A stretch of 64,000 bases of DNA from Macrostomum lignano (lineage: Eukaryota): positions 248,001 through 312,000 of the forward strand of contig NIVC01000884.1 of NCBI GenBank assembly GCA_002269645.1. The letters run 5' to 3'. The position numbers were made by a program, and so were the translations under genes. The notes under the pieces were generated by a model. It made no database searches and was not told the origin of the DNA. It saw nothing but the letters and a program-made list of their open reading frames with translations. How positions within the stretch are numbered: position 1 is the stretch's first letter; the number at the start of each line of letters is the position of its first letter. Below are positions 6,311 through 14,632 of this stretch, in pieces.

Positions 6311-9300
6311 ATGCATCGGCACCAGCAGTTGCAGTCGCTGTACATCGAGGTGCCGCAGCACAAGCAGGCCCTGGAGCGGTACCAGCAGCTGCGGCACGAG
6401 CTGCCCGATCCTGACCAGTTTGAGCGGCTGGTGCTGCTGCAACAGGTGAGATCTCTGGGACAGCTGCAGTTGAGTTTGTCTATGGCAGAAACCCCATGCA
6501 TTAATGACTGCATTAACAATAGGACAAGCATTTCATTCCTTACTGGCCTCCAGCTCGTTTCTAAGAAAATTGAGGCATGTACATATTCACGCAGGACCTG
6601 ACTTTCTCATTGAAACTCTGTGCATTGAGAATTTGTAGAACTAAAATCTAAAACTAAAACCTAAAACTAAAATCCAAAACTAAAAGCTAAAACTAAAATG
6701 TAGAACTTAAATCCAAAACTAAAAGCTAAAGCTAAAATCTAGAACTAAAATCTAAAACTAAAAGCTAAAACTAAAATCTAAAACTAAAAGCTAAAACTAA
6801 AATGTAGAACTTAAAATCTAAAACTAAAATCTGAAACTAAAATCTAAAACTAAAATCCAAAACTAAAAGCTAAAACTAAAATGTAGAACTTAAATCTAAA
6901 ACTAAAAGCTAAAACTAAAATCTAAAACTAAAATCTAAAACTAAAAGCCGAAACTAAAATCTTGTTCATTCCAAGGAGACCCGCACCGGCTCCGGCGACA
7001 CCGCCGCCCACCTGGTGGTCCGCCGTCTGCCCGACGCTGTGGCAGTGGACTTTCTCGACTATGTCAAGGCTACAGAGCGCAGCCTGGACGAGCGGAACTC
7101 CTCCGGAGCGACTCCCCTGCTGCTCTGCTGCGGCCTCGGCAAGCCGCTCAGCGCCGGCTACCTGCTGCGCTCCGGCCTCTGCGATGTGAACGCCAGCAAC
7201 TGCATCGGCATCCAGCCTCTGCTGCAGGCCTGCGCACTGGGCCAGCTCACTCTGGCTGGCCGCCTGCTCGACTGCGGTGCCGACCCGACAGCCGCCGACA
7301 TCACCGGCAGCAACGCCTTCCACCAGCTGATGGAGCAGCCCGAGCTGGAGGCGCGGTTGGAGGATGTGCTGGCGATGATGGCCCGGCTGCAGGTGATGAT
7401 CTGACTCGTGATCTCACTCATGATCTCACTCATGATCTCACTCATGTTCTCACTCATGATCTCACTCATGATCTCACTCATAATCTCACTCATAATCTCA
7501 CTCATGATCTCACTCATGATCTCACTCATGATCTCACTCATGATCTCACTCATGATCTCACTCATGATCTCACTCATGATCTCACTCATGATCTCACTCA
7601 TGATCTCACTCATGATCTCACTCATGATCTCACTCGTGATCTCACTCATGATCTCACTCATGATCTCGCTCATGATCTCACTCATGATCTCACTCATGAT
7701 CTCACTCATGATCTCACTCATGATCTCACTCATGATCTCGCTAATGATCTCATAAACACAATTATAAAACTCACCGATAAAATCACTCATAAACTCACTG
7801 ATAAATTTACTGATAAACTCACTCATAAACTCACTCATTAACTCATCCGACCATCCCGCAGTTGCTGGGGCTGCGCCTGTCTGACGAGAATTCCATCGGG
7901 TTCAACCCGCTGTTTGTCGGCGTCCAACGGGACCGACTCGACTTTCTCCGCGCCCTGTTGGCCGCCCCCGAGTTCGGCGATGCTGTGGTCGAAGAGTGCC
8001 TGCAGAACTCGCACGGCATGACCCTGGCCCATGTGGCCGCCGGCCACTCCTGCCTAGCCAGCCTGGAGCTGCTACTGGCCGAGAGGTGGAGCTCAGTCTA
8101 TCACTCTCATTCTGTCACTTTCAATTTGTCACTCTCAATTTGTCACTCTCATTCTGTCACTCTTATTCTGTCACTCTCATTCTGTCACTCTCATTCTGTC
8201 ACTCTCATTCTGTCACTCTCATTCTGTCACTCTCATTCTGTCACTCTCATTCTGTCACTCTCATTCTGTCACTCTCATTCTGTCACTCTCATTCTGTCAC
8301 TCTCATTCTGTCACTCTCATTCTGTCACTCTCATTCTGTCACTCTCATTCTGTCACTCTCATTCTGTCACTCTCATTCTGTCACTCTCACTCTGTCACTC
8401 TTATTCTGTCACTCTCATTCTGTCACTCTCATTCTGTCACTCTCATTTTGTCACTCTCATTCTGTCACTCTCATTCTGTCACTCTCATTCTGTCACTCTC
8501 ATTCTGTCACTCTCATTCTGTCACTCTCTGTCACTCTTTTTCTATATACTTTAGCTCCTACTCCTACCCGGCCCACTGTCACGCTCACAAGTTACTCACC
8601 CTCTCCCTCCTCAGGTTCGGTCCCGAGCGCTGGTCGCGACTGTTGCTGTCGCGGGTTACCGGTGGCATCTGCGCCGGGTTCACCTGCCTGCACTTCGCTG
8701 TCCAGGCCCGCCTCACCAAGAACATCGCCCATCTCGTCCGGCACGGACTTCGCTTGTCGGCCCGCAGCGACAGCGGCCTGACCTGCGTGGACTTGGCCAT
8801 TGAGAGCGACGGGCTCGAGTCCCTGCTGACTGCCTGCGAGAACAGCGCGGAGCTCGAGGTGGTGCACAGCCTCATTGACCCAGTGTGGTCCTCCTGTGCC
8901 CTGCCGAGCTGCGAGGAGGCCGAACAGGTTAGGGGATTTATCCCAGATGGTCCCATCCCAGATGATCCCATCCCAGATGATCCCATCCCAGATGATCCCA
9001 TCCTAGATGATCCCATCCTAGATGATCCCATCCCAGATGATCCCATCCCAGATGATCCCATCCCAGACTTATCCCATCCCAGATGATCCCATCCCAGACT
9101 TATCCCATCCCAGATGATCCCATCCCAGATGATCCCATCCCAGATGATCCCATCCCAGATGATCCCATCCCAGATGATCCCATCCTAGATGATCTCATCC
9201 TAGATGATCCCATCCTAGATGATCCCATCCCAGATGATCCCATCCTAGATGATCCCATCCTACATTGATCCCATCTGAGATGATCCCATATTAGTTTGAT

Positions 9301-14632: not shown

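What the first reader, a model, noticed from the sequence alone, without database searches (positions are those of the whole stretch)
6311..14632. Chimeric-looking TRP channel: ankyrin array on a TRPM-like body
Seen: a complete, phase-consistent 10-exon ORF with about 8 ankyrin repeats, then about 300 aa of helical linker ending FELMQLSGCQQVFSTKCLNDFVDRAWLG, six TM segments, a TFGQ filter, NMLIAKFS, a TRP helix and a coiled coil. Knowledge: canonical TRPM channels have SLOG/MHR1-2 N-termini and no true ankyrin repeats, while ankyrin arrays typify TRPA, TRPC, TRPN and TRPV. The pre-S1 linker (cf. TCLELAV..C..FVAH..VQ.LL..IW.G), the FGQ filter and the S6 here read as TRPM-like. The S2 E-x-x-E (QEMPE) and S3 N-x-x-D (WNAID) residues match the Ca2+ site of TRPM2/4/5/8 and TRPC. 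Inference: this may be an undescribed or poorly described TRP subfamily in which ankyrins replace SLOG, and it may be Ca2+-regulated. This is the strongest candidate for a novel system in the window. A divergent TRPC/TRPN/TRPA-type channel remains possible.
Basis: partly seen in the sequence, partly recalled or inferred. Interest (0 to 1): 0.75.

Follow-up and report, generated by a model that had tools for sequence, protein, structure and literature searches.

The report
Orphan flatworm ankyrin TRP channel gene
This is a real, intact and selectively constrained ion-channel gene of the flatworm Macrostomum lignano that joins about eight ankyrin repeats to a very divergent TRP pore; the pore is nearest to TRPM channels but is too distant to be called a TRPM, so it is an unclassified TRP channel rather than a proven ankyrin/TRPM chimera.

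Summary
The 10-exon, 1158-aa ORF is real. All junctions are GT-AG, and the model is identical to GenBank PAA75441.1 (M. lignano, "hypothetical protein"). Three syntenic copies are intact, with pN/pS of 0.07-0.10 in the ankyrin, linker and channel parts alike.

Ankyrin repeats are confirmed by Pfam and PDB matches. No SLOG/LSDAT domain is found in the protein or in the 5 kb upstream that was scanned.

Only S3 through the TRP helix (aa ~810-1045) is detectably homologous to known channels. Its best matches are TRPM5, TRPM4 and TRPM2 (E about 1e-10 against PDB; hhalign probability 96.6%).

Calibration weakens the "TRPM body" reading:
- The protein scores 32-48 bits against TRPM4/5, about what TRPC6 scores against TRPMs (23-38).
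- The most distant TRPM pair tested scores 85 bits.
- A small neighbour-joining tree puts it outside TRPM (93-98%) but inside a TRPM+TRPC6 group (99%).

The linker, the pre-S1 motif, S1-S2 (including the proposed Ca2+-site glutamates) and the C-terminus show no significant similarity to TRPM. An extra hydrophobic helix and an 8-Cys cluster lie between the putative S2 and S3.

No relative was found outside M. lignano, but my searches were limited, partly by my own error.

Verdict: an unclassified group-1 TRP channel, moderately interesting.

The parts
6311..14632 (+). Whole coding region: 10 exons, 1158 codons plus stop. Exons: 6311-6445, 6976-7392, 7862-8085, 8615-8927, 9338-9613, 10281-10880, 11981-12365, 12665-13251, 13573-13827, 14348-14632.
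   Evidence: Assembled with GT-AG junctions and no internal stop. Identical to GenBank model P0003. Exons 100% identical to L003. pN/pS 0.07-0.10 among three copies. GC3 0.81.
6158..6310 (+). In-frame open stretch upstream of the ATG at 6311, with a possible alternative ATG at 6158. GenBank models start inside it and are flagged 5' partial.
   Evidence: ORF 6125-6601. N-terminal extensions of P0001, P0003, P0004, P0006 and P0007. No Pfam domain there.
6988..8873 (+). Ankyrin repeat array, aa ~50-345, about 7-8 repeats, encoded by exons 2-4. The block is flanked by phase-0 introns.
   Evidence: Pfam Ank_2 45.7 bits, Ank 27.9 and Ank_3 23.3 pass their cut-offs; weaker Ank_4 and Ank_5 (below cut-off) lie at aa 241-320. 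phmmer to DARPins and to ankyrin-1/2 over aa 79-341. Repeat parsing by eye. Intron phases.
9338..12085 (+). All-helical linker, aa 364-690 (exons 5, 6 and the start of 7), with a Gly/Ser-rich probably disordered stretch at aa ~540-575.
   Evidence: No PDB sequence match. No Pfam match, TPR_12 at 12 bits only. TRPM4/5 MHR3/4 sub-profile scores -1.5 bits, reached by 15 of 500 shuffles. hhalign finds nothing. Helices come only from a low-confidence AF2 model. Strongest constraint of all parts, pN/pS 0.02-0.06.
10848..12031 (+). Motif FELMQLSGCQQVFSTKCLNDFVDRAWLG (aa 645-672), split by intron 6.
   Evidence: Present. MAFFT --add places it on the TRPM4/5 TCLQLA...FFAxDGVQ..L...WWG motif. The pre-S1-to-S2 sub-profile scores only 0.7 bits, reached by 18 of 500 shuffles. 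hhalign instead pairs that TRPM motif with ankyrin repeat aa 312-331.
12089..12166 (+). Hydrophobic segment Ha, aa 692-717. Probably S1; alternatively a pre-S1 elbow.
   Evidence: Hydropathy. Best but insignificant local match of the TRPM S1 profile, -3.3 bits. MAFFT aligned it to the TRPM pre-S1 elbow. The positive-inside count favours S1.
12179..12241 (+). Hydrophobic segment Hb, aa 722-742, ending in CQEMPE. Probably S2, with E739 and E742 as candidate Ca2+ ligands.
   Evidence: String present. No significant alignment to TRPM S2.
12287..12358 (+). Cysteine cluster, aa 758-781: 8 Cys within a 46-residue basic loop (9 K/R, 2 D/E).
   Evidence: Sequence and counts. No database match.
12679..12744 (+). 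Extra hydrophobic segment Hc, aa 789-810 (LTTGLLLMPINFIFLLYVLARS), between putative S2 and S3. Role unexplained.
   Evidence: Kyte-Doolittle peak of 2.06. Both flanks are basic. MAFFT put it on TRPM S1. No significant profile match.
12766..12918 (+). S3 (aa 818-840, with W820-N821-x-x-D824) and S4 (aa 848-868).
   Evidence: Aligned to the TRPM S3 motif D-x-W-N-x-x-D and to S4 in phmmer, hmmsearch and hhalign.
12982..13134 (+). S5 (aa 890-912), pore helix and selectivity filter T933-F-G-Q936, followed by acidic E938 and D940.
   Evidence: Aligned to the TRPM4/5 'YRPYLQIFGQIP' segment.
13573..13827 (+). Exon 9: S6 (aa 980-1005, YAN..., N998-MLIAKFS), TRP helix (aa ~1008-1030, W1019) and the post-TRP LTPPP segment.
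   Evidence: Aligned to TRPM 'YANWLV...NLLIAMFSYTF...WKFQRY...RPxLAPPF'. TIGR00870 'trp' matches here, 38.7 bits for the whole protein, far below its cut-off. S6 is 5 residues shorter than in the references.
14474..14581 (+). C-terminal long helix, aa 1107-1142. A possible coiled coil.
   Evidence: Helix in the low-confidence AF2 model. 6 of 8 a/d positions are hydrophobic. No PDB or Pfam match. The TRPM4/5 C-terminal profile scores -0.8 bits.

Best explanation
The locus encodes one functional subunit of a tetrameric group-1 TRP cation channel of Macrostomum lignano. It belongs to the TRPM/TRPC side of the superfamily but fits none of the subfamilies I could compare it with.

Shown:
- It is a single intact gene, present in three syntenic copies, all under purifying selection.
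- It has a canonical N-terminal ankyrin array and no SLOG domain.
- Its S3-S4-S5-pore-S6-TRP-helix core is homologous to TRP channels. That core carries an FGQ filter, the conserved S6 Asn-x-Leu-Ile-Ala motif, the TRP-helix Trp and a proline-rich post-TRP turn.

Inferred mechanism:
- Four subunits form a cation pore whose narrowest point is set by Q936, as in TRPM2/4/5.
- The TRP helix couples the S4-S5 linker and S6 gate to the cytoplasmic linker and ankyrin layer.
- The ankyrin array acts as a docking or tethering platform.
- The S3 Asn/Asp pair (N821, D824), perhaps with E739 and E742, may form an intracellular Ca2+ site in the S1-S4 bundle. This last step is the weakest.

Evolution. The layout of ankyrin repeats, helical linker, channel and C-terminal helix is the one already used by TRPC-type channels. 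The simplest history is therefore a fast-evolving, lineage-restricted TRP that kept or expanded ankyrin repeats, not a recent graft of ankyrins onto a TRPM.
For: One real gene. GT-AG model. Identical to the GenBank model. Three copies sit between the same P4-ATPase and RPGR1_C neighbours. pN/pS is 0.09-0.15 for the ankyrin part, 0.02-0.06 for the linker and 0.05-0.12 for the channel.

Ankyrin repeats.

No SLOG. Pfam finds none in the protein or in the three + strand frames of the upstream ~5 kb. The TRPM4/5 N-terminal profile gives no score. All 120 TRPM4/5 proteins fetched carry PF18139 and PF18171 and no Ank family.

TRP core. phmmer against PDB gives TRPM5 at 1.6e-10, TRPM4 at 3e-10 and TRPM2 at 4e-9, and no TRPC, TRPA or TRPN in the best 60. 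hmmsearch with a 59-sequence TRPM4/5 profile gives 37.6 bits over aa 809-1043. hhalign gives probability 96.6% and E 5e-10. The S3-TRP sub-profile gives 57.4 bits, reached by 0 of 500 shuffles. TIGR00870 'trp' has E 3e-10.

Not a TRPM, but on the TRPM/TRPC side. See the bit-score calibration, the invariant-column counts and the NJ bootstraps. In those bootstraps TRPM without this protein gets 93-98%, {TRPM+TRPC6+this protein} gets 99%, sister-to-TRPM gets 29-40%, and this protein with TRPC6 gets 0%.
Against: - No relative outside M. lignano was found, so neither age nor family status can be judged. Those searches were weak.
- The tree is a 12-sequence neighbour-joining tree on 219 columns. It has no TRPS, TRPN, TRPVL or invertebrate sequences, and a long branch such as this one tends to be pushed towards the base.
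- The best pairwise hits are consistently TRPM4/5/2, and FGQ, YAN and IAxFS are features of that TRPM subgroup. A derived TRPM is therefore not excluded.
- Three hydrophobic segments precede S3 where only two can span the membrane, so the S1-S2 assignment and the Ca2+ site are unsettled.
- No expression, localisation or current data were available.
- The structure model was unusable, with mean pLDDT 38.7.
Confidence: 0.55

Rival explanations
1. It is a true TRPM-derived chimera. A TRPM (TRPM2/4/5-like) paralogue in the Macrostomum lineage lost the SLOG/MHR1-2 exons, gained an ankyrin-repeat exon block by exon shuffling, and then diverged very fast.
For: The best hits in PDB are all TRPM, and the TRPM2/4/5 group scores above TRPM1/3/7. 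It shares FGQ, 'LYAN.LV', 'LIAxFS.T' and the PPP turn after the TRP helix. MAFFT places aa 645-672 on the TRPM pre-S1 motif. The ankyrin exons 2-4 form a block bounded by phase-0 introns. Presence only in M. lignano so far fits a young, fast-evolving gene.
Against: The similarity is only at inter-family level. It shares just 3 of 11 TRPM-specific invariant residues. TRPM monophyly excluding it has 93-98% bootstrap support. No signal of MHR3/4, TRPM S1-S2 or the TRPM C-terminus was found; a recent SLOG-for-ankyrin swap should have left these. Strong purifying selection among the three copies argues against current rapid evolution.
Confidence: 0.2
2. It is a highly divergent member of an ankyrin-bearing family (TRPC or TRPN type). 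Its slightly higher score to TRPM would then be a long-branch or compositional accident.
For: The domain order (ankyrin repeats, helical linker, 6TM, TRP helix, C-terminal helix) is that of TRPC. The S2 motif is E-x-x-E, the form I recall for TRPC4/5, whereas the TRPM4/5 sequences here show E-x-x-Q (EE.R..Q). {TRPM+TRPC6+this protein} has 99% support and its place relative to TRPC6 is unresolved. It shares about as many pan-TRPM invariants as TRPC6 does. TIGR00870 'trp' is matched.
Against: It scores only 13 bits against TRPC6, versus 32-48 against TRPM4/5. It never pairs with TRPC6 in bootstraps. No TRPC, TRPA1 or NOMPC chain is among the best 60 PDB hits. The TRP box is IWRLSK, not EWKFAR, and the pore helix lacks the LFW motif. 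TRPN could not be tested directly.
Confidence: 0.15
3. It is an annotation or assembly artefact: two neighbouring genes (an ankyrin protein and a truncated channel) read through as one, or a decaying pseudogene.
For: Older UniRef/WormBase models list separate 152-aa ANK_REP_REGION and 320/454-aa Ion_trans fragments. The GenBank models are flagged partial.
Against: The fragments are pieces of the same ORF from an earlier, fragmented assembly. Three copies keep all ten exons in frame with identical junctions. The linker that joins the halves is the most constrained part, with pN/pS 0.02-0.06. There is no stop or frameshift.
Confidence: 0.03

Closest known systems
TRPM4 / TRPM5 / TRPM2 (TRPM2/4/5/8 group of melastatin TRP channels)
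   Same: These are the best sequence matches over S3 through the TRP helix. Shared features are the S3 D-x-W-N-x-x-D motif, the FGQ filter, 'YAN.LV' before S6, 'LIAxFS.T' in S6, the TRP-helix Trp and a proline-rich turn after it.
   Different: There is no SLOG/LSDAT domain and no detectable MHR3/4, TRPM S1-S2 or TRPM C-terminal coiled coil. It has canonical ankyrin repeats instead. Core similarity is 32-48 bits, against at least 85 bits between any two TRPMs tested. It falls outside the TRPM clade in the small tree. S6 is five residues shorter, and the S2-S3 spacing of 78 residues includes a Cys cluster and an extra hydrophobic helix.
TRPC channels (e.g. TRPC6)
   Same: They share the overall layout: N-terminal ankyrin repeats, a helical linker, 6TM, a TRP helix and a C-terminal helix. 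An acidic pair on S2 plus N/D on S3 fits what I recall of the TRPC4/5 Ca2+ site. It groups with TRPM+TRPC6 against TRPV1 and TRPA1 at 99%.
   Different: It has about 8 ankyrin repeats where I recall 4 for TRPC. It scores only 13 bits against the TRPC6 core. There is no EWKFAR box and no LFW pore-helix motif. It never pairs with TRPC6 in bootstraps. The linker has no sequence match to any solved TRPC.
TRPS (soromelastatin, ced-11-like), sister family of TRPM
   Same: It is an invertebrate, TRPM-related and very divergent channel family, and so a plausible home for a TRPM-like orphan (PMC7306681).
   Different: TRPS is reported as SLOG-linked and free of ankyrin repeats (PMC7306681).
TRPW of choanoflagellates (bioRxiv 10.64898/2026.06.15.732245)
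   Same: It is a precedent for a group-1 TRP clade with a different N-terminal repeat domain: most members carry WD40 repeats, and a single member carries the SLOG and NUDIX domains common in TRPMs.
   Different: It has a WD40 propeller, not ankyrin repeats. It is reported as lost in animals. No sequence comparison was made here.

Membership tests
TRP superfamily, group 1 | Six-TM channel core with pore loop, S6 'N-x-L-I-A' motif and a TRP helix with conserved Trp after S6 | tested here: met
   Significant alignments of aa ~810-1045 to TRPM chains and profiles. TIGR00870 'trp' has E 3e-10, far below its cut-off. Pfam Ion_trans is not hit, even at E 10.
TRP superfamily, group 1 | [quoted passage not shown] | tested here: met
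   Pfam Ank_2, Ank and Ank_3 above cut-off; ankyrin-1/2 aligns to aa 79-341.
TRPM | N-terminal SLOG/LSDAT domain (MHR1-2) | tested here: not met
   No Pfam LSDAT hit in the protein or in the upstream + frames of the window. The TRPM4/5 N-terminal profile gives no score. All 120 TRPM4/5 proteins fetched carry PF18139 and PF18171. The upstream neighbour is a separate P4-ATPase gene.
TRPM | MHR3/MHR4 homology regions before S1 | tested here: not met
   The linker has no PDB sequence hit. hhalign finds nothing there. The sub-profile scores -1.5 bits, reached by 15 of 500 shuffles. A fold comparison was not possible because the model had pLDDT 38.7.
TRPM | Channel core as similar to TRPMs as TRPMs are to each other, and placement inside the TRPM clade | tested here: not met
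   It scores 20-48 bits against TRPM4/5/8/7, versus 85-220 bits among those TRPM subgroups (TRPM4/5, TRPM8, TRPM7). It shares 3 of 11 TRPM-specific invariant residues. TRPM monophyly without it has 93-98% support. The tree is small, distance-based and lacks TRPS and TRPN.
TRPM | F-G-Q/E selectivity filter and 'LIAxF' S6 | tested here: met
   T933-F-G-Q936 and N998-MLIAKFS align with TRPM4/5 'IFGQIP' and 'NLLIAMFS'.
TRPM | VSLD Ca2+ site: E and Q on S2, N and D on S3 (TRPM2/4/5/8) | tested here: inconclusive
   N821 and D824 align with the TRPM S3 pair. E739 and E742 exist as a string, but S2 cannot be aligned significantly. They lie 78 residues before S3, with an extra hydrophobic helix in between.
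TRPM | C-terminal tetramerising coiled coil (Pfam TRPM_tetra) | tested here: not met
   No Pfam or PDB hit for aa 1005-1158. The TRPM4/5 C-terminal profile scores -0.8 bits. A long helix with heptad character exists, so a coiled coil of another sequence type is possible.
TRPC | EWKFAR TRP box, LFW pore-helix motif and TRPC-level core similarity | tested here: not met
   The alignment with PDB-verified human TRPC6 shows IWRLSK against EWKFAR and GFFLTFG against LFWAIFG. It scores 13 bits against TRPC6 and has 0% bootstrap support with TRPC6.
TRPA / TRPV | Core similarity to TRPA1 or TRPV1 | tested here: not met
   It scores -4 bits against TRPA1. It scores 28-29 bits against TRPV1; against the solved TRPV3 chains only the S6/TRP segment matched. 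The split {TRPM, TRPC6, this protein} versus {TRPV1, TRPA1} has 99% support.
TRPN (NOMPC) | About 29 ankyrin repeats and a TRPN-type core | tested here: inconclusive
   Only about 8 repeats are present. No NOMPC chain is among the best 60 PDB hits of the channel half. No NOMPC sequence could be brought into the alignment or the tree.
TRPS | Grouping with ced-11-like channels; SLOG-linked and ankyrin-free | not testable with these tools
   No TRPS sequence was obtained. The architecture reported in PMC7306681 (SLOG present, no ankyrin) differs from this protein.

The most novel reading that the evidence does not exclude
The gene is a surviving member of an undescribed group-1 TRP lineage that branched beside the TRPM+TRPS stem before SLOG was added and the ankyrin repeats degenerated. 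It would be a living example of the ankyrin-bearing, pre-melastatin state that Himmel et al. (PMC7306681) infer was lost before the TRPM-TRPS split.
Probability: 0.15. Interest if true: 0.75.

Novelty: new variant of a known kind. Interest (0 to 1): 0.4.

Why it matters
TRPM and TRPS are described as the ankyrin-free TRP families, and their ancestor is inferred to have been SLOG-linked and ankyrin-free (PMC7306681).

A channel whose pore is nearest to TRPM but which carries canonical ankyrin repeats and no SLOG could bear on two questions. The first is how the melastatin N-terminus arose, if the channel is old. The second is how freely TRP cytoplasmic modules can be exchanged, if it is young.

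It also adds an unstudied channel to a genetically tractable, regenerating flatworm model that is related to parasites in which TRPM channels are drug targets.

As it stands it is one species' orphan gene with inter-family-level similarity, so its weight depends on finding relatives and on a proper phylogeny.

Tried and rejected
1. My error: the single exhaustive profile search was launched on exon 7 only (pre-S1 to S2, 128 aa). It returned only the gene itself and an unrelated repeat protein. The decisive search with the conserved core was therefore never run.
2. Word-index homology searches. The 795-aa linker-plus-channel query found only the M. lignano cluster. The 272-aa core query found nothing, not even itself, so that negative is unreliable.
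Apparently only the first part of the query drew candidates. What I had typed as 'TRPM2' matched proteins named TRPM5 at 93% identity.
4. The bait segments used later as references were checked against PDB chains. TRPC6 and TRPV1 were identical, TRPA1 had one mismatch, and TRPM8 and TRPM7 scored about 2.2 bits per residue.
5. The single-sequence AlphaFold2 model of the full protein had mean pLDDT 38.7, so no fold search was run. A second model with a TRPM4/5 alignment was rejected as circular, because the alignment would impose the TRPM fold.
6. A metagenome scan for close relatives found none.
7. Supplementary files of TRP phylogeny papers held no usable sequences.
8. Assigning S1 and S2 by profile failed. 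Neither Ha-Hb nor Hb-Hc beats shuffles, and MAFFT's placement of Hc on TRPM S1 is topologically impossible.
9. Considered and rejected: a SLOG exon further 5' and a gene fusion or pseudogene.

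
Full report
WHAT IS THERE

Reading 5800-15200 and joining ten + strand exons at GT...AG boundaries gives a 3477-nt ORF of 1158 codons plus a stop, with no internal stop. The exons are 6311-6445, 6976-7392, 7862-8085, 8615-8927, 9338-9613, 10281-10880, 11981-12365, 12665-13251, 13573-13827 and 14348-14632.

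The only database cluster that matched was from the flatworm Macrostomum lignano, named 'hypothetical protein BOX15_Mlig003738g1/g2/g3, partial'. P0003 (PAA75441.1) is identical to my model and carries 13 further N-terminal residues. The window's exons are 100% identical to contig NIVC01000884.1.

Exon GC3 is 0.81, while introns have GC of 0.23-0.59. 63% of intron bases are tandem arrays.

IS IT A REAL, SINGLE, FUNCTIONAL GENE?

The assembly holds three syntenic copies. The two loci whose upstream flank reaches a called gene (L001, L002) have a P4-ATPase gene upstream on the same strand, and all three have an RPGR1_C-domain gene downstream on the opposite strand. All three keep the ten exons in frame.

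Between copies there are 24-36 synonymous and 6-9 non-synonymous differences, so pN/pS is 0.07-0.10. The ratio is similarly low in each part:
- ankyrin part: 0.09-0.15
- linker: 0.02-0.06
- channel part: 0.05-0.12

The older UniRef entries are a 152-aa 'ANK_REP_REGION' protein and 320/454-aa 'Ion_trans' proteins. They are pieces of this same ORF. They do not show two genes.

The upstream neighbour is a separate gene. The three + strand frames of the ~5 kb before the ATG have no Pfam match. A hidden SLOG exon is therefore not supported. An in-frame ATG at 6158 could add 51 residues.

DOMAINS

Pfam finds only ankyrin families. Ank_2, Ank and Ank_3 are above their cut-offs over aa 82-153, and weaker Ank_4 and Ank_5 hits (below their cut-offs) lie at aa 241-320. 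phmmer against PDB aligns ankyrin-1/2 to aa 79-341. By eye there are 7-8 repeats over aa ~50-345.

The channel half is very divergent. Pfam Ion_trans, LSDAT and TRPM_tetra are not hit, even at E 10. TIGR00870 'trp' is hit at 38.7 bits, with E 3e-10, far below its cut-off.

Hydropathy shows the following segments:
- Ha, aa 692-717
- Hb, aa 722-742
- an extra segment Hc, aa 789-807
- S3, S4, S5 and S6

WHICH TRP FAMILY?

Against all solved structures, the channel half matches TRPM5 (1.6e-10), TRPM4 (3e-10), TRPM2 (4e-9), TRPM1, TRPM8 and TRPM3. After these come TRPV3, over S6 only. No TRPC, TRPA1 or NOMPC chain is among the best 60.

Searched separately, three regions have no significant match:
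- the linker, aa 364-674
- pre-S1 to S4, aa 642-872
- the C-terminus, aa 1005-1158

A 59-sequence TRPM4/5 profile aligns only aa 809-1043, at 37.6 bits. hhalign aligns only aa 812-1046, with probability 96.6% and E 5e-10.

Sub-profiles tested against 500 shuffles gave the following:

| Region compared | Score (bits) | Shuffles reaching it |
|---|---|---|
| S3-TRP | 57.4 | 0/500 |
| MHR3/4 vs linker | -1.5 | 15/500 |
| pre-S1 to S2 | 0.7 | 18/500 |
| S1-S2 | 1.5 | 67/500 |
| C-terminus | -0.8 | 92/500 |
| SLOG vs ankyrin part | no score | - |

CALIBRATION

They were identical or nearly so. TRPM4/5 sequences came.

All-against-all phmmer scores over S3-TRP were as follows:

| Comparison | Bits |
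|---|---|
| this protein vs TRPM4/5 | 32-48 |
| this protein vs TRPM8 | 32-33 |
| this protein vs TRPM7 | 19-20 |
| this protein vs TRPV1 | 28-29 |
| this protein vs TRPC6 | 13 |
| this protein vs TRPA1 | -2 to -4 |
| TRPM4/5 vs TRPM8 | about 200 |
| TRPM4/5 vs TRPM7 | about 110 |
| TRPM8 vs TRPM7 | 85 |
| TRPC6 vs TRPMs | 23-38 |

The protein is therefore about as far from TRPM as TRPC6 is.

Of 36 columns invariant across TRPM4/5/8/7, it shares 19. TRPC6 shares 18, and TRPV1 and TRPA1 share 13 each. Of 11 columns specific to TRPM, it shares 3.

Neighbour-joining bootstraps on 219 columns under two matrices gave:
- TRPM monophyletic without this protein: 93-98%
- {TRPM + TRPC6 + this protein} against {TRPV1, TRPA1}: 99%
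- this protein as sister to TRPM: 29-40%
- TRPM + TRPC6 without this protein: 60-70%
- this protein with TRPC6: 0%

The tree is small, distance-based and vertebrate-centred. It lacks TRPS, TRPN and TRPVL. It settles only that this protein is not a crown TRPM and is not close to TRPC6, TRPV1 or TRPA1.

THE S1-S2 REGION AND THE Ca2+ SITE

N821 and D824 align with the TRPM S3 Asn/Asp pair.

E739 and E742 sit at the end of Hb, in a C-Q-E-M-P-E string. This resembles TRPM 'C-E-E-L-R-Q' and, as far as I recall, the TRPC4/5 E-x-x-E form. However, neither Ha-Hb nor Hb-Hc aligns to the TRPM S1-S2 profile better than shuffles do.

It also put Ha on the pre-S1 elbow and Hc on S1, which is topologically impossible.

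Only two of Ha, Hb and Hc can span the membrane. The loop between Hb and Hc has 9 K/R, 2 D/E and 8 Cys. By the positive-inside rule this favours Ha as S1, Hb as S2 and a cytoplasmic loop. In that case Hc would be a re-entrant or membrane-embedded hairpin, and the Cys cluster a palmitoylation or metal site. Both of these roles are inferences.

Ca2+ regulation is therefore possible but not shown.

LITERATURE

- MHR3 and MHR4 are reported to contain divergent ankyrin repeats (Burroughs 2015, as cited in PMC13143021). hhalign here paired the TRPM pre-S1 motif with one of this protein's ankyrin repeats.
- Large surveys leave some divergent TRPs unplaced (bioRxiv 10.1101/2021.11.14.466824).
- Choanoflagellate TRPW shows that a group-1 TRP clade can carry a different N-terminal repeat domain (bioRxiv 10.64898/2026.06.15.732245).
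- I found no paper describing this gene or this architecture.

CONCLUSION

Supported points are that the ankyrin repeats are real, SLOG is absent, this is one gene, and the nearest known pores are TRPM.

Unsupported points are that the 'TRPM body' is only an inter-family-level resemblance limited to S3-TRP, that the remaining 'TRPM-like' motifs are not statistically supported, and that no chimerism is needed to explain a layout TRPC-type channels already have.

The best reading is an unclassified, lineage-restricted group-1 TRP cation channel (confidence 0.55). The rivals are a fast-evolving TRPM derivative (0.2), a divergent TRPC/TRPN-type channel (0.15) and an artefact (0.03).

The main weakness is mine. 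The absence of relatives and the phylogenetic position therefore remain open.

Noticed in passing
window 6446-14347 (introns of the gene): Seven of the nine introns are each dominated by their own, different tandem array. The units are 13, 12, 14, 15, 4 (AGTT x264), 31 and 22 nt. Together they make up 63% of all intron bases. Array length differences seem to account for the different gene lengths of the three copies.
   Followed up: partly
window 12287-12744 (aa 758-810): An 8-cysteine cluster (CNCKCCVGGDGCCGTC) is followed by a strongly hydrophobic 22-residue segment with a central Pro-Ile-Asn. Both lie between putative S2 and S3. Nothing comparable aligns in the TRPM4/5 sequences compared here, although TRPM4 has a Cys/Gly-rich stretch just before S1. 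Its topology and role are unexplained.
   Followed up: partly
window 6125-6310: The reading frame stays open upstream of the ATG at 6311, with an ATG at 6158. All three GenBank models begin inside this stretch and are flagged 5' partial, so the true start (or a trans-splice site) is unsettled.
   Followed up: partly
window 1-1000 and 5252-5734: Long tandem arrays lie upstream of the gene. One is GC-rich at the window start and one has a 24-nt unit x20. No coding signal or Pfam match was found in ~1100-6310 on the + strand.
   Followed up: partly
window ~16400 onward, - strand: By coordinate transfer from locus L003, an RPGR1_C-domain (RPGRIP1-like) gene starts downstream on the opposite strand. 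The same neighbour flanks all three copies.
   Followed up: no
window 40806-41597 (-) and 42636-43319 (-): These look like retroelement remains. One ORF has the reverse-transcriptase RNase H domain (Pfam RT_RNaseH, E 9e-26). A nearby ORF has a CCHC-like zinc-knuckle string but no Pfam hit.
   Followed up: partly
window 55809-56678 (+): A 289-aa glutamine-rich ORF with no Pfam match, lying in a GC-rich stretch. It may be an exon of another gene.
   Followed up: no
window 17000-61000, many places: Much of the rest of the window consists of long micro- and minisatellite arrays that create spurious ORFs of 170-760 aa in several frames, for example 45824-48106.
   Followed up: no
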